Part shown: piece by piece, positions 12,314 to 55,149 of the stretch | Numbering within the stretch: the first letter of the stretch is position 1 | How the letters are laid out: each line of letters starts with the position of its first letter | Source of the DNA: Thalia democratica | Taxonomy: Eukaryota | Direction of reading: 5' to 3' | Length of the DNA: 64,000 nt | Assembly: GCA_965202585.1 (NCBI GenBank) | Contig: OZ241828.1 | Location: 65,968,001-66,032,000, forward strand | Program-made: the position numbers and the translations under genes | The notes under the pieces: generated by a model | What the model saw: only the letters and a program-made list of their open reading frames with translations | Told to the model about the DNA's origin: nothing | Database searches by the model: none

Positions 12314-15300
12314 CAAATTTAAAATCCGGGAAAAACCTGGAATTTGACAATCTAGGCTAAAAAATCCTGGGAAACCTAGAATTTTGAGAATTTTGGAATA
12401 AAAAACCTAGGATTTAAAATTCACTACCTGCGTTTATAGATGAGAAATTTGTTGGGTTGCCACCAATGAGTTCAGTTTCTGTTCAAAGCAAATACAGCAG
12501 CACAGCTTCGAGTTATTTGTAGTTTCAGCAGCCGAATTAAAAAAACAAGAAACCATCCGGCAAACCATGTTATTTCAGAAGAACCTGATTGCAAACAACA
12601 AATTCACTGACAGTTGTTATTTTTTGATTTTTCGATCAGCAAACAATAATCTTTATTTTTTTTAATAATTTTCAAGTTTGGTTTTACAAGCTTGTTTTCG
12701 ACTTTAACTTTAAACGTTAGAACTAACACATAACTCCTTATGTTTAATTACTTTTAAGAAGTTTTGTGTTATTTATGTTTGTTTGTAAACACTTATCTTC
12801 ATTTTTATAAAAAGGTTGTATAATAAAACCAATTTTTTTTACAAACGTTGCTGTTTTAGTTTTTAAATCTCAAATATATTTCAATTTGTTACTTATTCTT
12901 TAAACTACAAGAAAAATGTCGTTGCAGTAGTATCTATTTTTTACATAAAATTTTCTATTCTTACATTTAAAAATATTAATAATTATAAGAACGCTAATAT
13001 AGAAAATTTAAGTAAGTTTTTGAAAACGTAAACACTTTTTACGATGTCAAGAAAATAAATTAGTTTTAAAGTCGTAAATGACATAATTAAAACTTTAGAT
13101 GAATAGATTTTTTTACGTGTACGGTCGTAAACTTGTTAGTTTTTTTTGTAAAAGTGTGAATTATAAAAACTTTAGCTATTTTTTTATTTGTTATTTTGTT
13201 AGGATAAAAAAAAACTATATAATACATATGCAGTTTTGTTAAATAAGTTTGTTTTGTTAAAAAAACAAAAAAATTATGATGTTCTATCTAAATTATCTTA
13301 TATTGTTTAAAAGCAAATTTTAAAGAGTTAAACATTTTTACAACAATGATATTATTCAGATTTTATTCTAATTATTCAAGCTTTCTTAAACGTTTAAGTA
13401 AAAAAATATCTTAACAGATATAAACCAACATGTTAAATACCACACAACGGTGCAAAAGAGTCAGTTGGGTTGCTTAGCAACATAAACAGCCCTTTTAAGA
13501 CTTCCTTCACATCAGGACCATTATCTAACTTCACCTGTCGAAGTTTCTTCTTCAGATTACTACAGTGATCAAAGTCAATGAAAAAAATTTTAAATTTTTT
13601 ATGTTAACTAAATATTTCGGTAATTCTAAAAACTTGGTAATAATATTTTATTTTAATGAAATAGTACTTTTTTATATATTTTCTATTTAAAGCTAGGCTA
13701 ATTTTTGTTTACTTTTATGAAAAAAACATTTTTTTTAAAGCTTTATTATCGGCTAAAAATGTGTTTTAACTATGTAAAAATTTGTAGATAGATTTTGTTT
13801 TAAATATAACTATAACTTTTTAACTTATTATTTATAAAATCGCGTTTTTTGTCGAAATTGATTAAAGCTGCTGATATTTTTTTTATTTATGTTTTTTAAG
13901 CTTAAATACAATCATATTTTTGCTTAATTGTACATATATGTTTATAAATTTCATAAATATTGACTTTAGTTAAATATATTTTTGACTCACAGAAATTTAG
14001 TTTACTGTGAGAAATAACTTTTTGAAATCTGATTGTTTTTAGCATACGTGTTATGACTTTAAAATTGAGTTTTATAAAAACTATCACAATATTTAAGATA
14101 ATTACTTCCTTATTTAGATTTGATTATAAGCTTTCAAAAAAAAAAAAAACTTTAACTAAGAAATATTTTATGTAGAATAAAAAAATAAAAACTAGACACT
14201 TTAAATGCAAAAAAATTAATTGCACACTAAAACTAGAATAGTATTTAACGAAATAACATTAAATAATATAAAAGTTTTGTTTACTAGTTTTAAAGTTATA
14301 AACTGCTGAAAATGGTAGCAGGTACAATATCAACACCTTTGTTCAGATTTTGTCCTCATATTTTACAAAAAAAATTAAAAGCAAAATAAAAAATTGCCCA
14401 AAAACACGATTGATTTAGACCGGCAATTGTTTTTCCGATTTTTGAAATACCAATGCAATCAATTTTGAAGTGCAGTTTTCTGTCAGTTCAATAAGTTGTT
14501 TGTTCTGAGTCAAATACGTCTCTTGACACGAGACAGTTGCATTTTGTTAAAGAGCAGTTTGTAAAATTGTAACAAATAATCTTTGTTAATAAATGTATAA
14601 TTTTAAAATTTATTTTTAGTGTAAAATTAATTTGAACTTAGTGATAAGTCACATTATTATAAGTTATTTTTGTTTTTTTTACTGAATAACAAAACAACTT
14701 TCTTTACATTAAAGTGCATTATCCGTTTTATGGGAAATTAAAATATATATAATCAGTTGTATTACAGCTTTTAATGGCAATAATTGATCTTTTTTTAAAG
14801 ATTAACTGTTAAAAGTTTGAATAGTAAATATTAATTGATATAAAAGATGAATTCTAGTATGAATTACTTAATCTCTAAATAGTTATAATTTAAAGTATTG
14901 TAAAGTGATATAAAGTATCGTTTAAAAGCTATTATTTTAATTTTAAAAATTGTTCTCAAGAAAGTAGCAAATACTTTAAACGAAGCAAACGTATTTATGA
15001 TTCACTACTTAATTTAGTTTTTCTTAAGTTTTAAATAGTAGCACTTGAAAGATAAGATAATAAAAAAATAGTAGCTCGTTTTGGCTTATAAATCAGTGTT
15101 CTAGTAACTCGTTGTTGTTAGCTTAAAATTAACGTAATTTGTTACCTACAGGTCATTTATAGTGTTAGCTGTTATCAAGTAAGTAGTTTATTATGTTAAT
15201 ATTTTATTAGTTTGTTGTTTCTTATCATATGACAAAATGAGAAAATAAATAAAATATTCAATCAAATTAAAACAAACTAGATTATTTTTGTTAAAATAAA

Positions 15301-16533
15301 CAAAAACGCTTTAAAACTTTGTATTTATAATTTATAATTAAACATAAAATTAATTTAGATTGGAAAATATTTTAAATAATATCTAAGAAAATTCACAGTA
15401 AAAAGACATTAAGAAAAAAAATATTTGTTAAGCAAGTTTAATGATAAACAATATTTTGCATGCATATAGGTTTTTTAATCTTCGCTCTTACTTCACTTTA
15501 TAAGCTTAGGAATTTTCTTCTACTTTACTTCTTAATACTTGTAGTAAATATTCCTAAGTTTTAGAAAAGTATATAAAATTACTCCAAATTTGCAGCTAAC
15601 TATAAAATAAACAATTTTTTAACTAGTCATTAATAAATTCATTATAAAAAAGTTCGTTTTTGATCTGGTTTAAAGTTCTTTTAAAGCTAGTAAGGTTGTA
15701 ACAAAAATGTTTTTAAAGCTATTTAAACTGTCGTTTTTAAAACTTAACTGTTTTTAAACTTTTTCACTGTCTTTAAACCATAAAAATTTATTTAACAAAA
15801 TATCACTACTTAAATTTTCCATCGTTTATATATCAACTCTATACTTTGGTAATTAATTAAATTTTATATAACTACTTTTTCCTTAATTACTTTTTATTAC
15901 TATAACTTTTACTTAAAAGTTAGATTATATATCATATAATTCAAGTTAAGGTTATACATTTTTGTAGAAAAGTATTAAAGCTTAAGTAAGAAAATAAAGA
16001 TACTTTTAATCTTCATACTGTATTAAATTTATTTTTTTAATTAGTTGAAACTTTTAATTTTAAAAAATAGCATAAACTGTTTTTTCTATATTAGATTTTA
16101 AATATTTTATTCAAATAAAACTAAATTCTGATAAAAATGAAAAATTATAACAGTTATAAAGGTTTGCTACAAAACTAAAACATCAAAAAAATAGTTGAAA
16201 AACAACTGGGAACAAAAAATCAAACAAAGAAAGTTTGTAAAGAATAGTAATGCAATCTTTTTAAGAAAAGTTTTTATTTTGGCAAGATAACAATAAGTAA
16301 CTAAACATTTATTTGAAAGTTTATTTTAAAAAAAGTTTATTGCAAAGTATAAAGATAATCGACTTATAATTAATTTAATTTTTAAAAGTTACTTTTGTTT
16401 TTCAATATTAGTACTGTGCACACGATGCTAAAACTTAGTCTAGTTTAGACATCAAGTTAACACCAGGTACTCTTAAATTTTGATTTAAACAGTATTCAAT
16501 TCTTGGAATGTTAACTTAATTGTAAATTTCAAG

Positions 16534-19318
16534 GTGGTAATAGGCACGTTCCTAAAAAAAGCGAAAGTAAATTGAAAGTAAAAAAAGCAAGAAAAGCAAG
16601 AAAGAGAAATAAAACGCGCAAACTTCCGCCAGCCAAGTTTATCGACAGGGACCACACGTTCAACTACTACAAGTTTACAAAGAAAATGACGTCAGCGATT
16701 TGGAGGTGCGACAAGCGAGTTGGCGGATGCAAAGCCAGGATTCACACTGATTTGCTAACTAACAAGGTTCATTTTATTTTTTGAAAACTTCATGATTTGA
16801 TAACAAACATAACTAAAGTTTTTAAAGTCTTTGTATAAATAGTTACATTTAAGTATGCGATAAAAATACTGATATAGTGTTTTTTGAAAAGTCTTAGCTG
16901 TTTAAACTCTGTTCATAAAAATTGGTAAACTTTAATTGTTTAAATGTTTACTTTATTTATGTTAAATTTTTGCGATTAACATTTAGTAGGGGCTGCATAA
17001 AGTACAGCTAACATGTTTTATCCTGTCACTTACAGAAGTCTTCAGCTTGCGATTAAGTTTTCAGCTAAAAACATATTGGGAGTGCTTTTTAGTAAAATAG
17101 TAATGAAATATAATCTTAATTTTATTATTAATACATGATAGTGCTCATTAAAAAATATTTTATCAGAATTTTTTTTTGATGATTTGTTCATAACATGAAA
17201 TTTCTAAATACCTTTTTAGGTCTTTAATAATTTATTTTCACAAGTTCAAAATATATTTAGACCTACTAGGAAAGCTGCCTACATCTAGTTTAAAATTTGT
17301 ACTGTTTATAACTCAAACTACGAAACTCAGCATAAAATATAATATGTTTTAGTGTTTACTTATATAAGAAATTTTATCCTTTAACTAAATGATAGTACTG
17401 TAAGCCAAACATGTCTGTTTAATTTATAGAAAATCGTAGTCATCGGAACAAACTTACTCAAATTTACATCCTGTTTTCTACGCTCAAATTAAAATATTTG
17501 TTTTACTAAAAACTATGAAAAATTATACATCCTTCTCACACTTTAAAAGTTCTTAGTTTTTGAGAATTACGATAAAACTTAGTAAAACTGCTTTTGTACA
17601 AAAAAAATTATACATATTTTGTCAGTTAGAAATAATTTTTATTTTATAATACTAGAGCCAACTTAATGTATTCTATAAATTTTAAACAGGTAGTAAAACG
17701 AACAAATGATCACAACCATGACAGCAATCCTAAAGAAGTTGAGATGAAGAAGTTGAAAGCTCTAGTTAAAATCAAAGCTTTACAAACCGACATTCATCAA
17801 GATCAGGTTAATTTAATTGCATATATTTTACAAGAAACGTTGTAAGGTAATCACGTATTCAACAGTTATGACTAAAATAGTATTTATTAAACTGTTTTGT
17901 GACTTTAATACTAGTACATAGTTAATACTTTGACATTAGCTTGAAAAGCAATTAGAACAGAAGTACAAGTAATATAACATTTGATATGGTTAATTAAAAA
18001 AAATTGTTTTAGCCGATACTAGCTCAAAGCTGTATTTGGCTTAGCTGTATCTAGTATTATTGTGAAAATATTTCCAATTTACAGTTAGCGTTGTTTTATG
18101 CGTTTTTTTTCATTTTTGCTGTAAAACAACTAGTACTTTCAATCTGAAGCTTTTTTATTTAGGTTATTGAATTAAGTAAGAAAGAGCTTGGAATAAAAAT
18201 TGAGCTGGACCAAGTTCAGAGGCGCAATTTAAAGAAAATTATCAGAAGAGAAAGATTATTTAAAGAAACATTTCTCGACTCTAAGTTCCTTTGTTTTTTG
18301 AAAAAAATAGTGGCGGTTAGTGATTAAGCAGTGTGACAATTTAAAATATTTTACTATATAAACGTAAATTATTTAACTTTTAATCCTATAAATTAAAAGT
18401 TAGTAATAACATTACGCTTAGTCTACATTCAAATGCAGAAAATTATAAAATTGTACATAAGTTTACTTTTAAATTTTATAAAATTCATACTTATTTTACA
18501 AAGACACTTTGTTTAAATTATAACAACCACATAAATAAATAATAGTAGAATTGGAGGACGAAACAAATCAGGTGGAACAATATCACCAACACTCACAGAA
18601 ATATTATCGTCATGGGCATAACAGTCATTTTAGTAACGAGAAAGATTATTACAATCACGGTCGCCTGCAAACGTTTAGAAATAACCTGCACGATGTAAAA
18701 CCTGTGAACGTTTATGTAGAGTCAACAGGTCAGAAAAGTATATTAATTTGTTAAAAGTATGTATTTGTGTTATTAGAATTAAAACAACTTTTTTTGATGT
18801 CCTTTTTATCACATGAACATAGATTAATATAGTAAAAGGATAATTTTGAAAGCTAAGGTTTACATTACTTAGTTTAAAAAAAATGTTTTTATAGGTAATT
18901 TTTGTTATCTAAATACTCAAAGGTCGAGATACACGGAGAACCAACAGCAAAATGAAGCGATTAATGCACTTATCAAAATTGGTTTGTGATTTAACTGATC
19001 AATAAAGTGTATTATCTAATAAATGTAGATACTTGCCATCTTTTTTTTTACTATAAGTATGTAACGTTAAATTAAAACACAACATTTGCAATTTTGAAAA
19101 ATTAATTATAAAGCAAAATATAAAATGTGTTTTAGAAAGATTATGATTTTAAAGTACTACGTATTAAAAACAATGCATTAATTACACAAAAGTTTTCAAA
19201 CATTTTACTTATAAAACGTCAATAGTTTTTTATTTTACTTTCAGATCAACCTATCGTAGTCCATATAATTCAGGACGGTCCACTAAAGAAGACATACAAA
19301 AAGGAACCTCATTTTTAG
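16534..19318 (+). CDS. Spliced FLYWCH-type zinc-finger protein (MULE-transposase-derived). Exons 16534-16766, 17690-17806, 18163-~18315, 18546-18728, 18895-18981, 19245-19318; first exon(s) not located
   Basis: Joining exons 1-2 in phase 0 gives HTFNYYKFTKKMTSAIWRCDKRVGGCKARIHTDLLTNK|VVKRTNDHNHD, i.e. W-R-C-x6-C-x-A-R...H-N-H. Exon 3 has NLKKIIRRER. The last three exons join in phase 1 with GT-AG ends and stop at TAG 19316-18; AATAAA at 19527/19531. The exon 3 donor is ambiguous. Confidence 0.75.
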
Positions 19319-22138: not shown

Positions 22139-23055
22139 ATGAACAATCAGAGTAAAATCGAATACTACAAGGTGAGCTACAAACATTTTACATGATAAAT
22201 GTTTATAAAGTTTAATGAAAAGAAAAATAATTGAATTTTTTTCACGTTGATATAATTTTAACTATATTGAAAAGTTTCAAAAGTATGATTTTTAAACTCA
22301 ATTTTTAAACAAAAGCAGTAAATTTCAAAAATTAAAAAAAAAAAATTAAAAGTTTCATAGTATAAAACGTTAAAAAAGCAAAAAAAAGCCGTTCACTTCA
22401 TAATTTGAAAAAAACAGTAATTTAAAACTGAAAAATACTTTTTACAAATAAAAAGTTTTACATAAGTGTGTTAAAAAAATTGAATCGGCTTTTTTGATAT
22501 CAGGAGGTCAACGTGAAGTTAAAAGAAGAACTTGATACCCATTATGAGAATTGGCAGGAAATAATTGACAATAGAGTGGCTAATTTAAATTTGTTGTTTG
22601 AATTCCATGAAACTGCAGAAGAAAATAAAGAAAACCTTGAAAATAAAATTCAAAAGGCCCGTACAAAACTTATCTAAGAAGAAAATATGTCTGATAAACG
22701 TGTTAGACTCTTAAAGGATGATCTTGGTCAGTTTCAAGTTGAACTGAACGAAAAGTATGACTACTATTGTGACTTGATTTTTCAACAAGCAATTGTAATA
22801 AGAGTTCTCAATATAGACTTTTATGACTCAAATTAAATATAACAACGAGGTCTGACTTTTCAAAGAACTCAGCAATTTAAAAAATTTCAAGCTAATGAGT
22901 CATTTGTTGGTGATCAGTGTATGATATGCATGGAAGACATTGAAATCGGTAGAAATATGATGTGTCTCGACTGCAATGGTCAGCAAACTTTTTCTCAAGT
23001 TTGTATTGAAAGATGGTCTGCTAACCATAACACATGCCCCATTTGTAAGTTCTAA
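22139..23055 (+). pseudogene. Unprocessed RING-H2 E3 ligase pseudogene (exons 22139-22171 and 22504-23055)
   Basis: ATG...AAG|gtgagc and cag|GAG phase-0 intron; coiled-coil-like region then CMICMEDIEIGRNMMCLDCNGQQTFSQVCIERWSANHNTCPIC; three in-frame TAA stops (22675, 22834, 22840) and two Zn-ligand positions lost (H>Q, C/H>S). Confidence 0.85.
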
Positions 23056-30500: not shown

Positions 30501-32771
30501 GAAGATACGCAAAAAAGTTTTGCTAGAGAACTTTTTTAAAACCTAGGACAAAGTTTTATATATTTTTATTACCGTTACTTGTTTTTAGTTATTTATTTAA
30601 TTTTAATTATTTTTTAGTACGCAATGAATATATTAATTGTGTGAATTTTATATAATTAATTAAATTATTAGGTTATCTGAAATAACCAATAAGCTTTTGA
30701 GCAAAAAATTAATAAAAAGAAGTACTACTTGGTGTCTGAGTTGATAATAAAGAACAGTCACTGCTTTAGTTTTTAAGCATGAAATAAAATATACAGATAC
30801 TAAAGTAACTATTTTCAAGAAAATGTAGTTAAGCGAAAAGAAAATCGTTTTAAATGGGCTTTAACGATAGGCAAATTAAATTTTAATATTATTTTCTAAG
30901 AACAGTTTTATTACTGGTTTAGCTATTTCGTTTTTATTCACTAAAAAACTTGTATTTTAAAACCTTTTTTAATTTGAGTTAAAGTTGTTTTTAGAAAAAT
31001 AAAAACAGTTTTAGAACACTTTGACTATATTTTCTAGATACACTTTATAACGATAAATATTAACACAAATAGTACATCAGCTAAACAAATAGTTTTGTAG
31101 TTTTATTTTCATACTTCATGAATTCACACGAATGCTCAAATATTCAAATAAGCACTCTTCAAAACAAAACTATCAATTTACGGAAGTTAAAAGTATTTCA
31201 CACGAAACATAAAACTTTGTTTTAAATATTTTTGTAGATTCTTTAGGGTATAATTTCTATCAACACCGCCCACATCAAAAGAATAATAAAAATAATAAAA
31301 TCTTTAAATCTAGACACAATTCTAACTTTTAATAATTTGACAGCAACCATTGCATATAAGGTTTAAAAGTTATTTAAATGTCATGTTAATAAGTTAAAAA
31401 ATAACAAATTAATCTTATATGACTAATATGAACAGTTAAAACTTTGTTTTAGTTCAACAGCGACTTTAAAAACTTTATAGGATTGAAGAAATAATAAATA
31501 AATGTTTCAAAAATACGACGTTTTTATAAGGTTCGAACAAAAGCTGTTGATATTCAATAATGAATTTTTTAAATAAAGTAAAACAATTACCAAACCAGAT
31601 GTTTTACTTGTAATTTGCTATAATACATTAGTTCAACATTAATAGGACTGCAAGAAAAACAATAATAACTCTCTCAAAGAAGCTGTAATTTATAAAACAG
31701 TTTATTATTCTAAAAACAACTGTGATGAATAAAAAACATTATTAGTATTGATTATCTATCGAATTAAGAGTAAGCTTTTGCTGTTGACTTAAAATATGTT
31801 TTGGTAAATAGACTTGAAGATAACAACAAAATAAAAATAATTTGTCGATATTTAATAAATAAAACATAGAAAAAAGTAATGTAGTCTAAATACACTTTCA
31901 TCAACATTTTTTCTTTTCAAAGTTTTTTAGAAATTTATAAAATACTTTTTTTGTATGTCTAATTGAAAAGATTTGTTTTGTTACTGGTATTAACTAATAA
32001 AAATAATAAAAGTCACTCATTAAAAAAAAGTTATTAATTTCATTTAGATTGATATCAGAATAACCTTGCTGAAAACTGATAAGATTATAAAGTAAATTTA
32101 GTTATATACAAGGATTTTTATATGTCTAGCTAAAAATAGCTACATCATATAGAGTTAAGTGTAAAAATCTATCTAAAAGTTTTAAACTATAGTTTAGTTA
32201 TACTTTGCTGATTTAAATTTATTTTTAAGACGAAATTTTCTGAAATCATCATAAAATGGTTTGACCTCTTTTAAATAAATAACAAAAAAAGGTGGTCAGT
32301 TAATAAACTTTGTTATACTACAACACTTAGTTGACTAGTTACTTTATGACTTTTCCTTTATGAACTATGTTATAATTTTTAAAGTTATCGACAATGTGAA
32401 ACAAAAAAATTAAAATTTAGATTTTGGTTTAGTTATCTGAGAACGATTTAATAATTTTATTCTAAAAAATGAATAAACATTTTTGTATAAAACTAGTAGC
32501 CAAACATAAAAATGTAGTCTAATCTTTTTATCTTGTATTAGTCAACAAATTAGCCATTTCATAACTATTCAAAATAAAAAAGAGAATATTTTTTAGCCAG
32601 TTTTTTTTGATATGAGTACATTAAACAAATGTATTTTTTAAACTTAAAAATGAGTTGGCACAAATAAAGTAACTAAACATTTTTACGAACAAAAACACTT
32701 TTTTACGGCCTTAACATTTCAGTAATACTTGCGGTTACGTTTTTTACAATTGCAGATTTAACAACAAAAAA

Positions 32772-33802
32772 ATGACTTTCACTTTGTTCACATCAAACAT
32801 AAAACTGTTAACAACTGTGTTAATGGTCACTGTTATCAACTCGTTTGAACTTCAGCAAGGGGGTTATGACATTCTGTTGAACAAGTTTGACAATTTGACT
32901 CAACTCGAAAGTGTGCATCAAAGTGATAATATCAAGCCGGTTGCTCCTCACAAAACTTATAAATTCAGATGTAGGTGAGCTACAGTTTTTTCAGTTTTTT
33001 TTTAAACTAATGAGTTTAATCAAAACATAATGTTGGTTATAAAGTTGTTTCGCTAAAATTTTAAATAGTTTTTACTGATTGTTTGAAATAATAAATATGT
33101 TTTTAAGTAAAGTTATTTTGTGATTGATACTAAAAACTTTTATTAGCTTTTTATTTGTACTTGAATGTTTATTGTATAACCTACTTGTAGTTAAGTTAAA
33201 ACAACTGAATTAACACTTCTTTTATTAAAACTTTCTTAAAAATTTGTATTAATATTGAATCAATGAGTTACAGAAACCTAGAGCTTAGCTTTGTTGAAGT
33301 GAAAGATTGTGTTGGAAAATGTTACAACCCGAATACATGCCGAGTGTTCGAGGTAACTTTTTTTAAGTTCATCAGACATTTTACTAAAACTCTGCTAACA
33401 GATGTCATTTTAGTAATAAGACTTTAAAACAAGTGAATCATAAGTTTTAAAAAATTGTTTTTTACAGCTAAAACCAAAAATAAAATAACTGGTGTTGTAT
33501 ATGGAAAACAATAAAGTTTTTTAATTATAAAAAATGTATATACATAAAGTATATATAGAAATCATAATAAAGCTCTAAATGAGTAAAACCAAGTTATAAA
33601 TTAACAAATTTTATAGAAGTTCAAAAACACTCCGATATGGAAGTATGCCACCTTCAAAACACTAGATGGCGGTAAAGAGACGTTTCGCATTCCAGATGCT
33701 TGCCACTGCACAGTGACGTCACAGCAAAGTGGAAGTTCATACGACGAGTGCGTCAGCAAGCGGGGAGAAATATTTAAAATGATGATGATTTTTAAATTTT
33801 GA
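32772..33802 (+). CDS. Secreted cystine-knot protein, 155 aa (exons 32772-32974, 33274-33352, 33617-33802)
   Basis: Canonical GT-AG introns with matching phases (2, 0) give an uninterrupted frame: hydrophobic N-terminus, then C67-x12-C80VGKC84-x5-C90-x32-C123HC125 plus C139; CxGxC and CxC form the cystine-knot signature. Confidence 0.8.
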
Positions 33803-36800
33803 TATCGGATTTATTGTTTATTATGTTTTGAATTAAAAATTCAAGCAGTTTTATATTTTGATCATAAAACGCTTATGTTCGGTTTATCTTTAAAGCCTTG
33901 AAAAATTTAAAAGCCATTTTTATTTAAGCTCGGACACTCGTCTTCTTCTTCTATTTAACAACTTTTTCTTGCCTTTTTGTTAAATTCTATTTTTAATTAT
34001 TTAATGAAATACAAGTTTAGCAGAGATTAGAAATTATTTCATGATTTTAAAATTTTTGTTTTAGCGGTAAAACATATTTATTTTAAAATAAAACGATGCT
34101 ATTAAGTTTTTTGTTGTTGCTGTTGTTGAACTTTTCAATTCTAGAAATAATGATTCTGGTTTTTTGCTGACGTTATTTTTTATTGCTTTTCGATTTAATA
34201 ATTTAGTAGATTTTTATTTAGGTAATGAAATGATTATGTTTAGTTTGTTACAATATTTGAAGACTTTTAAACTCGTAACTACTTATTACCAAAACAGGAT
34301 ATTCTAGATTTTATATTTAATAATTTTTCTTTTTATTTCTGTCGACAGTTTTTCTTTAAATATTTTGTTTAGAGTAAAAAAACGTTTTAATGTAAAAATT
34401 GGCTTGTTAAGAAAAATAAGGACATTAAATTTGCTAACTACTTAACACATTTTCTTATTTTGCTTTGTTGTTAGTTTAATAACTTTAATGATAATTAAAG
34501 ACTAATAAAAAACTAACTTCAATGAAGTGTTAAATTTTTAACACTTGAAAACATAGTTTGGAATACAAAAAAGAGTATAAATAACTATTTAAAAAAATCA
34601 AATTTTATTGTTTTTTTCTTTTTTACATAAAAATTTTATGGGTAAATATTAGGGTAAATTATAAAAAATACATAGTTTTTTTTGTCCGAAACTAAATTTA
34701 TATATAAACATTTAACAACGTCTAGTACATCAATGTGTATGTGAAACACAAAGTTTTAGTACTTATTTTTGGAGTTTTTGCAAATAAACTATATTCACTT
34801 CAGAAAAGTATGATTAGTATGAGATATTATTTTAATAACAAAAGTTGTACCCAAAAATATTATATTTAAGCTTTTCTAAATTGTTAAAAAATAAAAAATA
34901 ATTCATTAATGAATTACAAATAATAAATGCATTTCACGGTAAAATTAATTTGATTTTTATTTTAGTTTAGCTTAACATTAATATTTTATTTATTTTTTAA
35001 TAAACTTAGATTTAGGAGACGTTTAATGTTTTATAAAATTATAAACTATACTGTGTATTAAGTTTAAAAAAAATACGGCTTCGGCTTAAATAAAACTTAA
35101 ATTTAGTTACTAAACAAACTTAGTCTTGCTTGTTTTGTGTTAAACGTTAACATTTTTTTATTCAGGTTTAGAGACTTTCTTTTTAGACAAATTTAAATAA
35201 TAATGAAAGGTATACATTTTATAACACGCTTAAACTTTTAATTGAATCATATTTCAATAAAAGGAAGGCAAAATTTGATTAAAAACCGAATAGTTTAATA
35301 AGTCAACCTGTTTTTTATTTGTTGCTAAAAAACTTAGATTTTTTGTTAGAAAATTGTACGTAAAGTTTTATGTTTGAAATGTTTAATAGTGCTATAAAAG
35401 TACAATAGTAATTATTTATTTAAAGTAATTTTAAAAACTTACATTAGTTTAATGAACTGTTGTTAAGCTTAATATTTTCAATTAACAGCAAAACTTAATG
35501 TTGCTAAATCAAGCACCCACAACAGATTTTAACCTTTGTTGATATAATTTACTCATTTATCATAATTTTGTAACAAAAACTCTACAAACTTAAGTTAATA
35601 TTCTCTTTTAAATAACTTACTTTAAAGTTCAACTTGAAATCTTTAAACAATAAAGCTTCTTTGTAACGAAACTGTATACTACGAAAAATTTAACAAACCA
35701 GCTGGTTTTATATATCTTCTAATATCTGTATACTTTAATTGATAACTAAATGGTCAAGTTACCAACATTGATAAACTACTGTCTCCTTTTTTTCAACTTT
35801 TTCTAATCAATCAAATATATTTTTTTGATTTTTATCAGTATTAAGGCTCACACTCATCTCAAGTGAAGATCAAACGAGTTCAAGTGCATTGTGTTCAGCT
35901 TCTTAGGAAAGAACTCGAATAGGGCGCGAAAGAAAATACGGGATAAAGAAAGTTCAGTTATTAGTATTATGTTTTTTAAGTCCGGATTACGGTTTTTCTA
36001 TTAAGTATTTTGAACATTGTTTACGTTGACCAAGCGAAAGATTTTACACTCCTTAAGGGCTTGTTTATTAATAATAAAAACTAAATAAACTTCAAGTTGA
36101 GGTAATGGGTACTGTTTTAGATATTCTAGCAATATTGGTTGAGTCGAAAAATGTTCTTACCCAGATAAAAAGAAATCAAATGCATATTTCTTTTCTAAGT
36201 TGTTTTAATGTGTCTTAACATATTTATTACATTTGTAAAACTATTTATTTGTTGTACTACTGATGTTTGTAAATGCTGCTTAGCCTTAAAACATTAAGCA
36301 GTTTAGAAAAATGAAATATTTAGTTATATTTTTAAACCCAGTTTGTAAGCATTAAATGATCGATTATCTTGTAGATTGTAATCTTAAAGCAAACATTGTA
36401 TACAATAATCGCTTGTACATGTCAAGTATTAGAAGTTTACAACTTGATTTAACATGAAAAAATTTGAAAATGTTTTTTTTGTGTTACAAAGTAAACTTTA
36501 ATGACAAAAAACTATTAAAGTATTAGATAAATGTAAAAATAAAGTAAAAAATTAACGTATCATAAAACATATGTTGTTAATACAGATAAAAGAAGTTTTA
36601 AGATTAAAATTAAGTATTTTTTTTTAGAAACTTTATTAAGTTTTGCTAAAACAACATGCTTTACGACATTAAAACTTTGCAATGGTAAAACAAACAAGCT
36701 TCTTAACAATGGTTGTGTTTATAACAGAGTGTTGTTAAAATTCGTAACTTTTTGTTCTATTAATATAATAACAAAAGTTTGACCATATCGTTGACCCCAT

Positions 36801-41445: not shown

Positions 41446-43108
41446 TAAAGTATTTAACTTGACATTTTTAATTAAATAAGCTCTTTACATTTCAGTAAAT
41501 TGAGCAATATTTTTAATGAAGACAAATAACTACACAAAATGTACTATAAATAACTAAAGTTAAACGATTTTTGAATTAACGCAGGTTTGTATGTTAAAGT
41601 TTTTAACAGGTTTTAAAAATTTATTTAAGTTTGATTGAGTAAAGTTAACTATTTTAGGTGAAATTTTAATGTAAACAAAAATAGTAAACTAATTTATAAT
41701 GTATTTTTTCATTGGTTTATTCTAAACCATCTGCTGTATAAGTAAAAAGCAGATCATATTTTGATTTGAAACGTCTGAAAGAAAAAGTTAAACTTACGCT
41801 ATTCCGAAACAGTCGGTAATAAAAGTTTAAAAAACAATTCAAGTTTATTTAAGTGTCGTGTTTTATTAATGTGTGGCGTAAAATTAGTATAAAATAGAAT
41901 ATTAACAACTATATGTAGTTTGTGTATTTGGTTGATGTAGCAACTAAAAAAGAAACAGTAACTTTTAAACAATTTAAGAAAACTTTTTCCCTAAATGAAA
42001 GCTGTTTTTACTTTACAACTATTTCTTTTGTAACTTTGGATTAGCCAGAAAACTAAAACCTTAAAGTTATATTGTTGAAATAAAACTACAGCTTAGTTTG
42101 CTGTATAGGATACGTGTGTCAATTACGTAACTTCCTAATTAAATGAGTGGGAGTGAGTTTGTTCTAAACGCCACAACTTGCAAGTTAGTAATACAGCACT
42201 TGCAACCAACATTTAGTTTTTTTATACCAAGTCACATTTATTTTTTTACATTTTGTTTTAGCAATAGTTGAGATATTGTGTTTCAAATGCTTTTTAGTTA
42301 TTACGACAATAATCGAACGATAAAAAAATAGAAAAATAGGTAAAGTTATTTAATTTGTTAAGTATTACTTATACTATAAAGAAAAGTTTTAGCAAGTTCA
42401 AGCTGTTTTTAGGAAAATTCCTGTTAATTTTATAGATTTTAGTAAGTTTTTTTTAAATGATGTTTTTAAATGTAGTTAATGTTTTTGTTTTAAAATTAAG
42501 TATTATTATGTTTAAAAATGATACTATTATCAAGAATAATGACTTTAGTACAAAAAATAATTCAATTCACAATGTTATATTACATTTTGTGCAATAAGTT
42601 TATGTACAAATATTAACTAACTTTTGATATGGTTGTAATCAAAAAATAAAAAAGAAAAAAACATCCACCTTAAAACACGACCAATAGTAAAATTAACATT
42701 TGAAATTGCTTTATTATGAAGCAAGTGAGGGTTTACAATGTAGATGATATGAAAATACTAAAACTTTAAAACTAATTTTAATGTAGCAACTACTACATTC
42801 TGCGAGCTGGTTTTTATCAGACAAAAAGAATTTTCTGCTTATAAAGATATCCGTCTAATTTAAAAAAAAATTTAGACTGTACGGAATGAATATTACAAAT
42901 ATCATGTCAAGGACTTTAAACTGTTAATACTGTTTATACAGATTGAGGAATTAAACTAAGTTACAAATAATAGTTAAAAACTAACAAAATAGTTCAAGCA
43001 AGTAAGAAAATACTTTTAAAAACCCTAACCACATTCTCTTCAACAGAGTAGTACTGAAAACGACCTGTTTTTTAACTCCTTAACTACTTTAGAAAACAAC
43101 AGCCGAAG

Positions 43109-44512
43109 ATGAGTTGCAAAAGACTTTGTCTGCTACTCATAGCGCAAACCATCGCTGCGAAATTTCAGTGTAAAGTGGGCTACAAAATTGGTCATTCTAG
43201 CGGGTTCATGCCGGAAGTCGAGGCGTGGAAATCTGGTGGTCTTACAGAGGTGGCTTGCGATTCCTCAACAGGGATCGGACACAAATGCTTGCGGTTGGAA
43301 ATGGAAGAAATGGAACTAAACGGAACCAAAAGTTTGTGGCATATTATTGTGGATAAACCGTAGTAAAATTTATTTTAATTTATTTATTGCGTGTCATAAA
43401 AATAAATCACGCTACATTTATCACTTTATAGATAAAAATAATCTAGGAAAGCTATTTTATAATTTTGTTTATTAACGAAGTTTATTCAAAAAGTTCAAAG
43501 TATCAGTTTTTTACAATATTTGTAGGAAATTATGTTTAAAAATTAGCCTTTATATGTCACGAATAGTAAAGTAAGTAAACTAGTAAAGCTTATTAGTTAA
43601 GAAAAAAAAATACAAAAATTTAACAATGTACTTAACATTGTGATTTATTCACAGTATTATTCTAGTGCTCATCAACACGCAAGTTAAAAATGACCCTTTG
43701 TTTTACAGTAAAATTTTGAGCGTTTTAATTTGCTTCACAGTAAAAGACGTGACGTATATGAGCTGCCAGATGTTTTGCGATTTGCATTATGGGAACGTTA
43801 CTGAAGTACAGAGAAAGTTTAATGCAGGCGTATTGTTTCAGGTTGCAGATAACAAATTTCAAGTGAGCAAGGGGTGAGCTGATAGTTGTTAATTTATACT
43901 ACTTTTATTGGTTTAAATAACTTTTTCCTACCTTGCAAACATGCTGTACGATGTTTTCTAGTTTTTTATTAAAAATAAATGAAGTTAGTTTTAAGCATTA
44001 AAAAAAATACAATTTGTTTAAGTGAAACTTTTATAGAATAAGAAACTGATAATTTTTCAGTTTTGTTAAAGTTTTAAAAAGTGTTTTAAAAATTGATTTG
44101 CAAAGTCTATTTTTCAATCAAACATCTAGGATGATAATTGTTTAAAATAATTTTGGTGTGAACAAATTTAAAAAGTTACAAACCTATTAAAATTAAAAAC
44201 ATGATATTCAAAGTTAAACTTATAGTGAACAAGTTGTGTTTAACTAGCACTGTAGTTTCAAGCATAGCTCCCAAATGAAGTTGCCGTAGAATATTAACGC
44301 AACAAATGTTCAAAAGTTCAAATGTAAACAGAAAATAATATTTTTTTTTGTTACAATGCAGTGATGTCAAAGCTCACTGTTGCACGACCGACAAGTGCAA
44401 TGATTTGAAGGACAAAAACATCCCAGCCAGCTGCGGTGGAAGAACATTTGGTGTCAACTTTCTAATGAGCTTTTTTGCGGTGGCCGTTTTCAACGTAGCG
44501 TGTATCAACTAA
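43109..44512 (+). CDS. Ly6/uPAR (three-finger, LU domain) GPI-anchored protein, 168 aa (exons 43109-43331, 43741-43873, 44362-44512)
   Basis: GT-AG introns in phases 1 and 2 give one frame: signal-like N-terminus, 8 domain cysteines ending in the diagnostic CCTTDKCN, then a small-residue omega region and hydrophobic tail FLMSFFAVAVFNVACI. Confidence 0.88.
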
Positions 44513-47629: not shown

Positions 47630-48273
47630 AAGACCACTAAAGTGTTTACATTAAAATGAACAAAAAGTTTTTATTAACACCAATAACAGAATGTTTTACT
47701 TTAATAATGCTTATCTACAAAAACAACAGTTATAGTTAACTAAACATTAATAAAACAAAGTATTTTTAAACTTATTTTTATTCAAAAACTTATATTTCTG
47801 TTGAACAATGTAACAAACAGAGTATTTGAGATTGAAGTAGATCTTAGTTTGCTAATAGGTTTTTAAATTGTGTTTTATATCATTAATTATTTAATATTAG
47901 AAAATATAAACTATGTTAATAACTTTGTGACAAAATGTCTTTTGTTACAATATAACTTATCAACTTAATAAATCCCGAGTCAAGAATAGTAAAATTTACT
48001 GTACTTATAAATTAATGAATTTGGTAACTTTAATGACTTTAAATTATACAAACAAAACACTTTATTTACACATTCATTTACTACGCGATAACGTTGCTAA
48101 CTAATATACAGAGTTCAACAAAAAAGTAATCAGATATTATTGACGTAAGCTTCAGTTGTCTAGATGCTGAGTGTTTTTATTATAAATAATTAAAATAAGA
48201 GAAAAAATTCCCAACCAGCGAGCTAATTTAAATTTTTAGAAACCAAAAAATCAGGACTTAGTGAATCCTGAGC

Positions 48274-49170
48274 CTACTGCAATAAAACTGATTGAAAAAT
48301 TTCGGAAACACGTGTCCTCGTTGCAAACGAAATGCTTAAAATCGTCTTTCTAGCCGTTGGTTTGCTCCTTAAACTCCTGATACAGTCTTCTTCGTACGTT
48401 TCTTTCGAGCCTTCATCTTCTTTCCGCCTGACGCACTTTTGAAAGGATCTTATTTGATTTCGCTCGTTCAACTCGTGTGAACACTTGCAACTTTTTCGAC
48501 TCCAGTATTTCGTTGAGGTATTGTTATAATTAGATAAAAAGGTATTGTAATGATTAAATATTGAAAAGTCAATATTGTGATTATTTTTCATCACGGAATA
48601 TCCGGCTGCAACTGTCGAGCTCTTAGAGTGGTCCTTTTAACCCGGATTGGGACCTTTTAAAATCTTTAAAATGTGTGGTTAAAACAGATTTAACATATAA
48701 ATTAATTCAAAAGAATATTTTGAAAACGTACTCTAAATTTACAGTTACTCAGCTTCACTGCAAAACGGATTTTCTACAATAATAAAAATAAATATCAAAA
48801 CGGCAAACTTTTCAAAAACAAATAAAACATTGCTAGAAATGTAGTAAGATTTCAGAAAAACATCATGTTGTACAAGTTTGAATATTATTTTATGGTTTGA
48901 AACCTCCTTTTAATATTCCAACAGCATTGTCAAGGCTCGCGTTGTGAAACAACAAAATGTTGTCACTTTTCTTTAAGCTTTTTTGGTGCCGTTTTACAAC
49001 GCGGTATATCTTGTCTGCATAAGGAGTGCCTCTGATCATCGTATCTTTGAAACATTTATTGATGATTTCGTAATCAGAACAGTTGAATTCTATGGCGTGC
49101 AATTCGTACATTGAGTATTCGTCATGTTCGTTAGCTATTGAGCGGCTAATATTGGTTATTTTAACTTTTG
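48274..49170 (-). pseudogene. Decayed PARP-like pseudogene, copy B
   Basis: Near-identical to copy A; here a stop follows GGFKP directly (ORF 48890-49111) and the downstream ORF is 2 aa longer. Confidence 0.7.
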
Positions 49171-51859
49171 TTTATTTCATTGTTCATATACATATACGTA
49201 TATATGTATATATGAATTTAGAAATTAGGTAGTTTAAATTATTAAAAAGTTTGTAGTATAATATGTTTTAACTTTGACAACTTGAAACTTTTAAAATTTT
49301 TTTATAAGATTTATAATTAAATGTAAACTTTAGTTTTGTCTGTTTATTGCTGTAGTAGTTAAAAATTAGTACTTTGGTTAAGCTAAATTACTAGCGCTTT
49401 TTTTTTTTAGATTATAATAAAATTGATAACTATGTCTTTTATATATTTTTTATCAGAAGTTTTAGTTGTAAGCACTGAAGAGCAAACTTAATTTGGCAAA
49501 AAAACTATAAAAAAAAAAGTAAACAAAAATACATTAAACGTTTACTGAGTTAAAGTCAAACTAGTTGACTTTATTTTGTAGGAGTAAAGTAGTTTTTTTT
49601 TTTAATTTAACTTTAAATTTCCCTAAATAATTAAACTGAGAAAATTTTTATGAAAATTGAAATAACTTTAAAACTTTTAACAACACATGGAAACCTAAGC
49701 GTTTTCAGTAAATTAATTCTAAAAACACTTTTATAGTTATCTTACTATAATAAACACTCTAAATAAAAGTTTCTTCAAAAAGTTTTAACTAAACAACCTT
49801 TCTTCAATTTTTTTTATCCAATTGGCCGATTTTTCACTTTGTGAGTTCGTATAGCTAAAATATTTAGAACAAAATATTAATTTCTTTTTCTATGCTAAAA
49901 TTATAATCTTACTAAAATAGTTATTTTCAAAGAATATTTTTTAATGTTGTTGTTCAGACAACTTTTATTTAATAGTAACATAAGGTGAAGTTACAATGAA
50001 AACAACATTACTTTGTTTATTACAAGATATATAAGTACCTTTTATAACTCATTGAACTTGACAAAAGCAGTGTTTGGCTTTTATCAAAACAAGAACTGAG
50101 TTGTGTTTAAGATTAAGAGTTTTGAGCTTTTTCTTAAAACCGCTGTTGCAGTCTTGTACAGTCGTAGTAAACGTAATAAATATTAAACTTAGAACTTTTT
50201 ATTTACTAATATGTTAAAATAAGTTTAAGCTAAAAGTTAATAATTCTAAATACTTTGTGTATATGCCCTTGAAAATAACGGCTAATCATAAATTATATCA
50301 GAGTTTTCCAAAAAGGAAAATATCGCCATTGTTTAAGCGAACTCATTAAGTCGGTAAAAATAACTAGTAGGCGCAAAAAAGGTAAATTTTTGAAACTTGA
50401 CAACTGAAGTACTTTATCAACATTAGATAAAATAACTTTTGTAAGAAAAAAAAGTTAAAACTAGCTGTAATGAACTGCTGCAAATTACTTGCAGTATTCA
50501 TTGTTCGAACCCTGAATACAAAAGCTAGATCAAAAACGGCCATATTCGAACATGTTGACTTTTAGAATTTGAAAAGGGGAATTCCGGTGAATCAACAATT
50601 GGACCCGATCGGACTGTCAAGTATACAAGAATGTTTTTTGTAAAGAAATGCATAACTGTAAAATATTTAATTGTTTAGGACAAATTTTCACATACAATTT
50701 TATATCACAACAGAGTGTAAGGTCAAAGAATGAAGATTTTAGAATTTATAGTAAAATATGCTTTATTACATAAACAAAAATTAACAAAATAAAAAAATGT
50801 AATAAACTGCTGCAAATTACTTGCATTGTTTATTGTTTGAACGTTTAATATTAAGAGATTATTTAGAGCTTGCTGAAGTTATAAGAAATGAGGCTTAAAA
50901 TCAATGATGCAACATTACAGTTAAAATAAATGATGCAGTAATTCATCAAAACATAACAGTTACATTTTGATGTGTTCAGACTGTGTGATGGGCAGCTATG
51001 TGAAAGACCTCAAGAAAGAAATCTTGAACTTATTTGATATGTTTATATAAGGTACTGTTTGATTATAGAGTTAATTGCCAACTGACGATGAATGCTTTAC
51101 AAGCGTTAGTTTGTTTTAAATTCTAATGGCAATTGCGATTATTTTTTGCATTTTTTTGTATTGACATGTTTGCTGCCAGTAAAATGATTGCTGCCTGTTA
51201 CTTAAATTTAGAACTATTGTTTACTGAACTTATTTATACTACAGTCGTTTTAAATAAATTATTTAACAAACAAAATTGTTAGCATTTTTAATTCACAGAA
51301 TTATATTGCACAAGACTTGTACCTTTATAAATTCAAAACAGGTATAATAAGTATTTATTATTAAAAAAAAAATTAAACTAATAAACATAACCTTCAAGTT
51401 ACACTAACAAATTTTAAAAGACTACTGTTGAAAACTTTAAAGTGTACTTACTGCTTTTAATGATTTTATTAGATAAAAATCATATAAGAATTATATATTT
51501 ATGTATTTTAATATTTTAATTTTTATACAATTAAAATTTAAAAAAACGATAAATAAAAATTTACTGTACTTACTAAACATTTAAAGAAAAATGTGTTGTT
51601 TTCTAAATTTAATCAAAAACTATTTAATAAAGTTTAAGTACATACAGAAAAATTTTAATTAGTAAAAGCTAACTTCACTAAATAATAATTATGATTTTAT
51701 ATATCATTGAATTCACTTATAAAGTAAAATATAAATGCTAATAAATGATACTAGCATAAATTAAATAAGGGGTAACAGTGATACTAAAAATAAAAAATAA
51801 CTATTGAATTTATAATTTAAAATAAAATTTAAAGTAAAATTTAAAAAAAAGCTACCAAC

Positions 51860-55000: not shown

Positions 55001-55149
55001 CTGCAGAAAATATAAGCAAAAAGAACAAGTTGAAAATCTACCCACACAAAGTCAACCACACCTAATTGAGACTTTGAATGTTGGCCCACCAACATCCTAA
55101 CCTCACAGCATGTTAACAAGTAAGATACATCTACTTAGCGGTATACTAT

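What the first reader, a model, noticed from the sequence alone, without database searches (positions are those of the whole stretch)
32772..33802. Hidden three-exon secreted cystine-knot ligand (Spaetzle/neurotrophin/CKH-like)
Seen: the ORF track shows only a 68-aa fragment, but two canonical introns extend it to 155 aa: MTFTLFTSNIKLLTTVLMVTVINS...YKFR-C-RNLELSFVEVKD-CVGKC-YNPNT-C-RVFEKFKNTPIWKYATFKTLDGGKETFRIPDA-CHC-...DEC. Established: CxGxC plus CxC with two threading cysteines is the growth-factor cystine knot. Inference: it lacks the CC of TGF-beta, the CxGCC of PDGF/VEGF and the extra cysteines of glycoprotein hormones and DAN proteins. The ETFRIPDACHC end, a short pro-region ending in Arg before Cys1 and a seventh, possibly dimer-forming, cysteine recall Spaetzle/neurotrophin-type or non-bilaterian cystine-knot hormone-like peptides. 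It may be an unannotated lineage-specific signalling ligand.
Basis: partly seen in the sequence, partly recalled or inferred. Interest (0 to 1): 0.8.

Follow-up and report, generated by a model that had tools for sequence, protein, structure and literature searches.

The report
Orphan secreted cystine-knot-like protein gene
A small three-exon gene for a secreted, cysteine-rich protein is real and is kept by selection in several related marine (probably salp) genomes. Its cysteine pattern fits a growth-factor "cystine knot", but its fold, family and expression could not be tested here.

Summary
Exons 32772-32974, 33274-33352 and 33617-33802 (+) join through GT-AG introns into a 155-aa protein with a signal-like N-terminus and the pattern C-x12-CxGxC-x5-C-x32-CxC-x13-C.

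New here: the exon-1 ORF led to co-linear loci in about ten Tara Oceans metagenome assemblies. These keep all three exons, both splice positions and phases, all seven cysteines and the knot glycine. dN/dS is 0.14-0.21 at dS 0.5-0.64, and introns have diverged in length. So this is a real gene under purifying selection.

The relatives also correct the model. They carry an eighth cysteine, lost here by a 9-codon deletion. They stop 12 codons earlier, so the hydrophobic tail is a stop-loss read-through.

The family is unresolved:
- No Pfam or PDB sequence hit reached threshold, and no relative was found in 1.8 billion proteins.
- Protein-language features of exon 3 point only to cystine-knot families, Spaetzle and NGF first.
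- A cysteine-fixed shuffle test gives z about 4 to Spaetzle and 3.3 to NGF. It also gives 3.7 to a PAN domain, an incompatible fold.

The genome is probably a salp, not a cnidarian. The scan's first readers flagged two similar genes elsewhere in this genome; neither was followed up.

The parts
32740..32755 (+). Pyrimidine-rich tract ending in AG, 16 nt before the ATG. Candidate (trans-)splice acceptor for the 5' end of the mRNA.
   Evidence: Sequence ttttttacaattgcag. An AG at the same distance is kept in all three homologue types. Its function is inferred, not shown.
32772..32974 (+). Exon 1. Start codon, signal-like peptide (residues 1 to about 24), conserved N-terminal region with an NLT sequon, Cys1 (residue 67) and two bases of codon 68.
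   Evidence: hydropathy peak 1.8 at residues 11-21. Relatives P0005-P0014 are 34-66% identical. The homologues have an in-frame TAA directly before the ATG. The donor AG|GTGAGC lies at the same codon position in all loci.
32975..33273 (+). Intron 1 (299 nt, phase 2, GT..AG).
   Evidence: GC 21%. The homologous introns are 335-531 nt and 40-62% identical over all columns.
33274..33352 (+). Exon 2 (79 nt): RNLELSFVEVKD-CVGKC-YNPNT-C-RVFE, holding Cys2, Cys3 and Cys4.
   Evidence: It is 79 nt in every homologue, 87-89% identical at DNA level with no indels. KDC[VI]GKCYNPNTCR is invariant.
33353..33616 (+). Intron 2 (264 nt, phase 0, GT..AG).
   Evidence: GC 20%. The homologous introns are 447-527 nt. 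An in-frame TAG (33614-33616) sits at the acceptor, so exon 3 can only start at 33617.
33617..33766 (+). Exon 3, conserved coding part. A long beta-hairpin-like stretch NTPIWKYATFKTLDGGKETFRIPDA, then CHC (Cys5, Cys6), a Ser/Gly-rich linker and Cys7 (residue 139).
   Evidence: 38 of 50 residues are invariant in three lineages. The 29 residues from NTPIWK to CHC have one variable position (Y/H) across four lineages.
33767..33802 (+). Species-specific read-through tail (EIFKMMMIFKF plus the TGA stop).
   Evidence: The group A homologues have TAA where the window has GAA (AAGCGGGGATAA against AAGCGGGGAGAA). The other groups stop at or within one codon of that position.
33832..33837 (+). Candidate polyadenylation signal ATTAAA, 30 nt after the stop codon.
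   Evidence: This is a motif only, not tested.

Best explanation
This is a real, lineage-restricted protein-coding gene of a very AT-rich marine animal genome, probably a salp. It makes a secreted protein of about 130 residues.

The conserved core runs from Cys67 to Cys125. It most likely folds as a compact growth-factor-type cystine knot. In that fold Cys80-x-Gly-x-Cys84 and Cys123-x-Cys125 close a ring, and Cys67-Cys90 threads through it. The fold would have one long, almost invariant beta-hairpin 'finger', residues 91-122. The first finger would be unusually short (12 residues) and the heel only 5 residues.

The protein would then act outside the cell as a ligand, probably as a dimer. The ancestral form has two further cysteines, one in the N-terminal region and Cys139, which could link chains or clamp the N-terminus. 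The copy in this window has lost the N-terminal one.

Shown: gene structure, conservation, purifying selection and the cysteine framework. Inferred: secretion, knot topology, dimerisation and a signalling role.
For: Gene reality:
- GT-AG sites and compatible phases.
- Exon against intron GC, and GC3 of 44%. This fits Thalia democratica, with genome GC 25.3% and CDS GC about 17 points higher (PMC13746493).
- Co-linear loci in Tara metagenomes keep the same three exons.
- dN/dS is 0.14-0.21 at dS 0.49-0.64, and the window branch has omega about 0.17.
- Exons are 81-89% identical without frame-breaking indels. Introns are 39-62% identical over all columns and change length.
- Of the variant sites listed in the DNA runs, 7 lie in 468 exon nt and 23 in 563 intron nt. 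Four of the seven are synonymous.

Secretion:
- A hydrophobic N-terminus is conserved.
- The NLT/NST sequon is kept in all relatives but one, P0014, which has KAT there.

Knot:
- All six framework Cys and the Gly of CxGxC are invariant in four lineages.
- The pattern is expected in 1e-4 of shuffles.
- Atlas features of exon 3 give only cystine-knot families: Spaetzle, NGF, IL-17 and Noggin. With those left out, they give Cys_knot, DAN, sclerostin and PDGF.
- Cys-fixed shuffles give z 4.2 to Spaetzle and 3.3 to NGF, against about 0 for VEGF-A and IL-17A.
- hhalign of the exon-3 profile against Spaetzle gives P 1e-3.
- The C2-C6 spacing (x3, x5, x32, x1) is close to VEGF-A (x3, x6, x33, x1), counted on a PDB-verified sequence.
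Against: - No cystine-knot Pfam model and no PDB sequence matches, even at E 10.
- All hhalign probabilities are at or below 22%.
- The Atlas score is 0.80 with 163 shared features, in the range that shuffled proteins reach a third of the time.
- Twelve residues between Cys1 and Cys2 is far shorter than in the verified references: Spaetzle 36, NGF 42, VEGF-A 30. That stretch also has no obvious turn.
- Exon 2 gives a sub-threshold PAN_3 match (E 0.005, 17 bits against a cut-off of 21.1) and z 3.7 to the plasminogen PAN domain. The motif evidence therefore points equally to an incompatible fold.
- There is no RNA evidence, and the spliced protein is absent from the 15-billion-protein collection.
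- The fold could not be predicted.
Confidence: 0.5

Rival explanations
1. The gene is real and its product secreted, but the core is not a growth-factor knot. It may be a PAN/apple-like module: helix CxxxC, then C-x2-F, with disulfides 84-90, 80-123/125 and 67-139. Or it may be another small disulfide-rich fold, such as a cysteine-stabilised alpha/beta arrangement, which also uses CxxxC with CxC. Such a protein would act as a binding, adhesive or defence protein rather than as a receptor-activating dimeric ligand.
For: - The PAN_3 match has E 0.005-0.017 for a whole-library search, in the window and in the homologues.
- The Cys-fixed shuffle test gives z 3.7 (p 0.006) to the plasminogen PAN core.
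- C-x3-C-x5-C-x2-F is the spacing of all four factor XI apple domains printed.
- The span from Cys67 to Cys139 (73 residues) is the size of an apple domain.
- The first 'finger' is too short for any verified knot reference.
Against: - The PAN match is below Pfam's cut-off and covers only 21 of 71 profile positions.
- The factor XI apple domains give z about 0.
- The PAN Cys that should follow Cys4 by roughly 10-20 residues is absent.
- A PAN pairing leaves one Cys of the invariant CxC unpaired.
- No PAN or defensin family appears among the 100 best Atlas hits for exon 3.
- The Gly of CxGxC is invariant.
Confidence: 0.3
2. The core belongs to the neurotrophin/IL-17 clan but has an incomplete two-disulfide knot of the tunicate/vertebrate IL-17 type. 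The ring would be Cys84-x5-Cys90 with Cys123-x-Cys125, and Cys67-Cys80 would form a separate local loop.
For: - Both hhalign and Smith-Waterman align Cys84 and Cys90 with NGF Cys58 and Cys68 (KC.[DN]PN...CR), and CHC with CVC.
- Tunicate IL-17s are reported to have only the two-disulfide type (PMC11087794).
- IL-17 clusters make up 17 of the 100 best Atlas hits.
Against: - IL-17A gives no similarity (hhalign P 0.4, z -0.4).
- The IL17 Pfam model does not hit.
- This mapping ignores the invariant CxGxC.
- The NGF alignment has P of only 0.03.
Confidence: 0.1
3. The open frame is conserved but no longer serves as an expressed protein gene in this species. On this reading it is a silent or decaying copy.
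For: - No RNA run holding the locus was listed, although other loci of this genome had RNA data according to earlier notes.
- The window copy has lost a conserved Cys through a 27-nt deletion, and has lost its stop codon.
- A low-depth DNA variant lacks 250 nt of intron 2.
Against: - The frame, start, splice sites and all framework Cys are intact.
- The window branch has omega about 0.17 over dS about 0.4.
- Exonic variants within the species are mostly synonymous or conservative.
- Both lesions preserve the frame.
Confidence: 0.07

Closest known systems
Spaetzle / neurotrophin (NGF) cystine-knot cytokines (Pfam PF16077, PF00243; PDB 3e07/4bv4, 1sg1/5jz7)
   Same: - Small secreted proteins with six knot cysteines ending in CxC.
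- The last strand TFRIPDACHC resembles SFKIPSCCKC in Spaetzle and FIRIDTACVC in NGF.
- A turn with DG sits in the long hairpin before that strand.
- The second finger is of similar length: 32 residues here, 29 in Spaetzle and 27 in NGF, counted on PDB-verified sequences.
- They are the best Atlas feature hits.
   Different: - Neither Pfam model hits.
- The ring here is the tight CxGxC (x3), against x6 in Spaetzle and x9 in NGF.
- Cys1-Cys2 is 12 residues, against 36 and 42.
- Cys3-Cys4 is 5 residues, against 13 and 11.
- There is no furin- or Easter-type activation site before the knot.
[quoted passage not shown]
PDGF/VEGF homology domain (PF00341; VEGF-A, PDB 2qr0/1vpf)
   Same: - It has the nearest cysteine spacing from Cys2 to Cys6: x3, x6, x33, x1 in VEGF-A against x3, x5, x32, x1 here.
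- A conserved helix-prone N-terminal segment lies ahead of the knot.
- The ancestral form has eight cysteines, as PDGF/VEGF do.
   Different: - There is no sequence similarity (hhalign P 0.24, z 0.3), and no Pfam hit.
- It lacks the CxGCC signature and the interchain Cys positions.
- Cys1-Cys2 is 12 residues, against 30.
- The two extra Cys lie outside the knot.
IL-17 family (PF06083)
   Same: - Similar size (about 155 aa).
- Secreted, with a knot-type C-terminal CxC strand.
- The family is present in tunicates and is known for very low sequence conservation (PMC11087794).
   Different: - There is no similarity to IL-17A, and no Pfam hit.
- Tunicate IL-17s are reported to lack the Cys1/Cys4 pair, which this protein has in the canonical mapping.
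PAN/apple domains (PF08277 PAN_3; plasminogen N-terminal domain 4a5t; factor XI apple domains)
   Same: - The core motif C-x3-C-x5-C-x2-F is shared.
- PAN_3 gives a sub-threshold match (E 0.005).
- The shuffle test gives z 3.7 to the plasminogen PAN domain.
- The domain size is similar.
   Different: - The score is below the curated cut-off, and only a third of the profile is matched.
- The expected fifth Cys is missing.
- Factor XI apple domains give no signal.
- The exon-3 half shows no PAN-like features.

Membership tests
Growth-factor cystine-knot superfamily | Six cysteines in the order C1 ... C2-x-G-x-C3 ... C4 ... C5-x-C6. | tested here: met
   Cys67, 80, 84, 90, 123 and 125, with Gly82. 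All are invariant in four lineages. The pattern is reached by 1e-4 of composition-matched shuffles.
Growth-factor cystine-knot superfamily | Knot topology: the C1-C4 disulfide passes through the ring made by C2-C5 and C3-C6. | not testable with these tools
No cDNA-like locus was found.
Growth-factor cystine-knot superfamily | Two long beta-hairpin fingers, C1-C2 and C4-C5. | tested here: inconclusive
   Finger 2 has 32 residues, which is normal. C1-C2 has only 12 residues, against 30-42 in the PDB-verified Spaetzle, NGF and VEGF-A sequences.
Spaetzle (PF16077) / NGF (PF00243) | A match to the family profile at or above the gathering score. | tested here: not met
   Neither model hits at E up to 10, for the 95-aa spliced core, the exon pieces or the homologues. 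PDB sequences give no hit either.
Spaetzle / NGF | Residue similarity beyond the cysteines. | tested here: inconclusive
   Cys-fixed shuffles give z 4.2 (p 0.004) and z 3.3 (p 0.011). hhalign gives P 0.0076, 0.029 and 0.001, with probabilities of 5%, 2% and 22%. A PAN control reaches z 3.7.
PDGF/VEGF (PF00341) | The eight-Cys signature with C-x-G-C-C, and a profile match. | tested here: not met
   The motif is CVGKC, not CxGCC. There is no Pfam hit, hhalign P is 0.24 and z is 0.3. Only the C2-C6 spacing agrees.
IL-17 (PF06083) | A profile match, and a C-x4-C ... C-x-C framework. | tested here: not met
   There is no Pfam hit, hhalign P is 0.4 and z is -0.4.
PAN/apple (PF08277 and relatives) | A profile match at the gathering score. 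| tested here: not met
   PAN_3 scores 15-17 bits against a cut-off of 21.1, over profile positions 15-38 of 71 only.
PAN/apple (PF08277 and relatives) | Cysteine framework C1..C2-x3-C3..C4..C5..C6, with C5 about 10-20 residues after C4. | tested here: inconclusive
   C-x3-C-x5-C-x2-F fits the factor XI apple domains. But there is no Cys between residues 90 and 123, and the factor XI apple domains give z about 0.
Secreted (classical pathway) proteins | An N-terminal signal peptide. | tested here: inconclusive
   There is a hydrophobic stretch at residues 11-22, with a Kyte-Doolittle peak of 1.8, conserved in all relatives. A conserved N-x-T sequon is also present. No signal-peptide predictor was available.

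The most novel reading that the evidence does not exclude
Thaliacean tunicates keep a miniaturised member of the neurotrophin/Spaetzle/IL-17 cytokine clan, with a complete three-disulfide knot. This subphylum is thought to have lost neurotrophins and all full-knot IL-17 types. The almost invariant 30-residue finger would be a receptor-binding surface for a Toll-like, IL-17R-like or p75-like receptor. That would give a new ligand-receptor pair in the sister group of vertebrates.
Probability: 0.15. Interest if true: 0.65.

Novelty: new variant of a known kind. Interest (0 to 1): 0.42.

Why it matters
The gene codes for a small extracellular protein kept under clear purifying selection in several pelagic genomes. 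One 30-residue stretch has stayed nearly unchanged while silent sites have diverged by 0.3-0.6 substitutions per site (pairwise). That degree of constraint usually marks a binding surface.

If the fold is a cystine knot, the family would be the most compact growth-factor-type knot known to me. It would be a candidate signalling ligand in salps, whose cell-cell signalling repertoire is almost unexplored and whose relatives are reported to have lost neurotrophins, full-knot IL-17s and, in most tunicates, PDGF/VEGF.

It also shows that small spliced genes of this kind escape ORF-based gene calling. Only the exon-1 ORF is on record in public protein collections.

If the fold is something else, it is an ordinary lineage-specific secreted protein.

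Tried and rejected
- RNA test of the junctions. The three runs listed (X1-X3) have flat depth over introns and contigs that cross exon-intron borders, so they are genomic DNA. A second search restricted to RNA-Seq listed none.
- Exon-junction and exon-3 patterns in JGI metagenome contigs gave 0 matches.
- Exon-3 peptide against 1.84 billion representatives gave four hits. All are bacterial SprB-repeat giants and spurious, and the query did not find itself. The word-index search gave no candidate.
- Exact look-up of the exon-1 ORF: not on record.
- Pfam on the pieces, on the 95-aa spliced core and on the homologues gave only sub-threshold PAN_3.
- PDB sequence searches with a single sequence and with profiles gave nothing at E 10.
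- Atlas search of the 30-aa exon-2 piece gave noise, with score 0.50.
After that I did not send the spliced sequence to any other remote search.
- No paralogue lies in the window. There are no Rfam families or tRNAs.
- Rejected: the chance-ORF reading, because of conservation and dN/dS.
- Rejected: a cnidarian origin. The composition fits Thalia democratica, and earlier notes agree.
- Rejected: a cleaved pro-peptide ending in Arg. That region is as constrained as the knot and has no conserved processing site.
- Rejected: a functional hydrophobic C-terminal tail. It is a stop-loss read-through.

Full report
**1. The observation**

The ORF list for 32500-34100 shows a 68-aa ORF at 32772-32978 and nothing longer on the + strand. 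Joining 32772-32974, 33274-33352 and 33617-33802 gives a 468-nt frame.
- The donors are TAG|GTGAGC and GAG|GTAACT, and the acceptors TTACAG| and TTATAG|.
- The introns are 299 nt (phase 2) and 264 nt (phase 0).
- Exon 3 can only begin at 33617, because an in-frame TAG forms the acceptor. The other two frames of exon 3 close within about 20 codons.
- Exon GC is 36-42%, against 20-21% in the introns and 24.3% in the window. GC3 is 44%.
- The N-terminus has a hydrophobic stretch at residues 11-22.
- Shuffles of the mature sequence reach the full six-Cys pattern in 1.1e-4 of trials.

**2. RNA evidence**

None could be obtained. The only runs listed (X1-X3) have even depth over exons and introns. 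Their contigs run across exon-intron borders, for example 32805-32994 and 33005-33323, so they are DNA. No joint at the predicted junctions was seen, and none would be expected from DNA. A search restricted to RNA-Seq libraries listed nothing.

The listed variant sites still speak for coding. Seven lie in 468 exon nt against 23 in 563 intron nt (Fisher p 0.015). This list is truncated, because the tool showed only its best-supported sites. Of the seven exonic sites, four are synonymous third-position changes and three are conservative (L5M, L72V, E94K).

**3. Relatives: the decisive result**

The exon-3 peptide found nothing real among 1.84 billion representatives, not even itself. That is explained: exon 3 has no start codon, so ORF callers never record it.

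The exon-1 ORF has both a start and a stop. It hit a cluster of 73-84-aa products from ENA/Tara Oceans metagenome contigs at 66% identity and E 2e-21. A profile of these added four more types, down to 34% identity. I fetched 20 contigs, L001-L020.

- tblastn finds all three exons, in order, in L003, L004, L006, L007, L010 and L013. The shorter contigs break off after exon 1 or 2.
- The contigs are co-linear with the window from about 30.6 to 34.6 kb, at 68-77% DNA identity.
- The gene models are L004 816-1045/1382-1460/1933-2085, L003 528-754/1286-1364/1812-1964 and L013 152-381/689-767/1295-1444. They give intact proteins of 153, 152 and 152 aa.
- Both introns sit at the same codon positions and phases, with GT-AG.
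- Exon 2 is 79 nt everywhere. Introns range from 264 to 531 nt.
- Exons are 81-89% identical. Exons 2 and 3 have no indels, and exon 1 has only an in-frame one. Introns are 39-62% identical over all columns.
- Nei-Gojobori estimates: window against L004, dS 0.49-0.50 and dN/dS 0.21. Window against L003, dS 0.63-0.64 and dN/dS 0.14-0.15. Window against L013, dS 0.60 and dN/dS 0.19.
- Synonymous against non-synonymous counts give p 1e-8 to 1e-12.
- A quartet fit puts omega at about 0.17 on the window branch, so this copy shows no relaxation.

The gene is therefore real and its protein is under purifying selection.

**4. What the relatives correct**

- (a) In every homologue a TAA lies directly before the ATG, so the ATG is the true start. 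An AG 16-18 nt upstream is kept in all, which is compatible with a (trans-)splice acceptor. That is an inference.
- (b) All relatives have nine more residues, RV[IL]RKYCPSF, in the N-terminal region. This stretch carries a cysteine, and one type carries two. The ancestral count is therefore eight, and the window copy lost one by an in-frame 27-nt deletion.
- (c) The homologues end at ...DEC[AV]S[KM]R[GR] or ...DECYNKD. Where the group A homologues have TAA, the window has GAA. The tail EIFKMMMIFKF is thus a stop-loss read-through.
- (d) The region before Cys1 has dN/dS 0.15-0.24, no weaker than the knot. It holds an invariant GYD[IV]LL.KFD stretch and an N-x-T sequon kept in all relatives but the most distant, P0014. 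It has no conserved dibasic site. It is probably part of the mature protein and not a discarded pro-peptide.
- (e) KDC[VI]GKCYNPNTCR is invariant in four lineages. NTPIWK[YH]ATFKTLDGGKETFRIPDACHC varies only at the bracketed Y/H position.

**5. Family and fold**

Profile tests were negative. No Pfam model of the cystine-knot clan matches the spliced 95-aa core, the exon pieces or the homologues, even at E 10. No PDB sequence matches, either with single queries or with profiles.

Three weaker lines favour a knot.
- (i) The complete framework is present, with the invariant Gly.
- (ii) Protein-language features of exon 3 return only cystine-knot families: Spaetzle in 36 of 100 hits, then NGF, IL-17 and Noggin. 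With those excluded they return Cys_knot, DAN, sclerostin, Cerberus, PDGF and GPA2. The scores are 0.80 or lower, which the tool rates as leads only.
Against these, Smith-Waterman scores compared with cysteine-fixed shuffles give z 4.2 for Spaetzle and 3.3 for NGF, and about 0 for VEGF-A and IL-17A. hhalign gives P 0.0076 for Spaetzle and 0.029 for NGF. With the exon-3 profile it gives 0.001 for Spaetzle, at 22% probability.

Counted on the same verified sequences, the Cys2-Cys6 spacing is closest to VEGF-A.

Against the knot, Cys1-Cys2 is 12 residues where the references have 30-42.

Exon 2 also gives a sub-threshold PAN_3 hit (E 0.005, 17 bits against a cut-off of 21.1). As a control I ran the same shuffle test against PDB-verified PAN and apple domains. 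Plasminogen PAN reaches z 3.7, and factor XI apple domains about 0.

Two motif resemblances of equal weight thus point to incompatible folds. Sequence alone cannot decide. The knot reading uses both cysteines of the invariant CxC and the Gly. The PAN reading leaves one CxC cysteine unpaired and lacks the expected fifth Cys. I therefore put the knot at about 0.5 and other folds at about 0.3.

I did not try to get round this.

**6. Host and context**

Earlier notes of this scan assign the genome to a pelagic tunicate, probably Thalia democratica. I could check only the composition. That species has a genome GC of 25.3% and a CDS GC about 17 points higher (PMC13746493). This matches 24.3% for the window and 39% for this CDS.

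According to the literature:
- The full three-disulfide IL-17 types are lost in tunicates and vertebrates (PMC11087794).
- PDGF/VEGF genes were found only in Ciona among tunicates (PMC10328876).

A complete-knot cytokine in salps would therefore be of some note, but membership in any of these families is not shown.

First readers flagged two similar small 'cystine-knot' genes elsewhere in this genome (s1-317372, s1-291903). Neither has been followed up, and I could not read them.

**7. Verdict**

- Gene reality is now strongly supported, at about 0.93.
- The likely mechanism is a secreted, probably dimeric, compact cystine-knot ligand with one highly constrained finger (0.5).
- The kind is known, the family is new and the architecture is unusual.
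- Expression, fold and function remain to be shown.

Noticed in passing
window 1008-15633 and 47642-62314: A 14.7-kb direct segmental duplication at 96.5% identity. The target gene lies in the unique 32 kb between the copies. It could be a real tandem duplication with a period of about 46.6 kb, or an assembly artefact.
   Followed up: partly
window 43076-43360, 43644-43874, 44339-44509 (+): A probable three-exon Ly6/uPAR (CD59-like) gene. The first exon has a Met and a signal-like start. The last exon has CCTTDKCN and a hydrophobic GPI-like tail. The CD59 model gives E 0.0076, below its cut-off.
   Followed up: partly
window 22843-23052 (+): An exon encoding a RING-H2 finger (zf-RING_2, E 2.4e-10). 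The rest of the gene was not modelled.
   Followed up: no
window 16515-16781 (+): An ORF with a FLYWCH zinc finger (E 2.3e-5, above the cut-off). It may derive from a transposon.
   Followed up: no
window 2225-2530 (-) and copy 48893-49171 (-): ORFs inside the duplicated unit with a weak match to the PARP catalytic domain (E 1e-3, below the cut-off).
   Followed up: no
window 33363-33614: In runs X1 and X2, which come from one sample, a low-depth contig (10-14, against 100 or more) joins 33363 to 33614. It removes 250 of the 264 nt of intron 2 with TA..TA ends. Such a variant could not be spliced and would shift the frame. It may be a rare allele, a decayed second copy or an assembly error.
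   Followed up: no
window 30602-31956, against L002:320-1628: 1.4 kb of upstream non-coding DNA aligns with a Tara contig at 73% identity, the same level as the introns. The loci are therefore orthologous or co-linear, and not just copies of the same gene.
   Followed up: partly
L002/L007 (ERZ28654358) and L003/L010/L013 (ERZ27291622): Two or three diverged types of the gene (dS 0.3-0.4 between them) occur in the same Tara assemblies. Either several related species co-occur, or the gene is multi-copy in one genome.
   Followed up: no
L011:381-776: The most distant relative found (P0014, 34% identity in exon 1). It keeps RKYCPSFE and RFRCR followed by a donor. The contig ends before exon 2, so the divergence of its core is unknown.
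   Followed up: no
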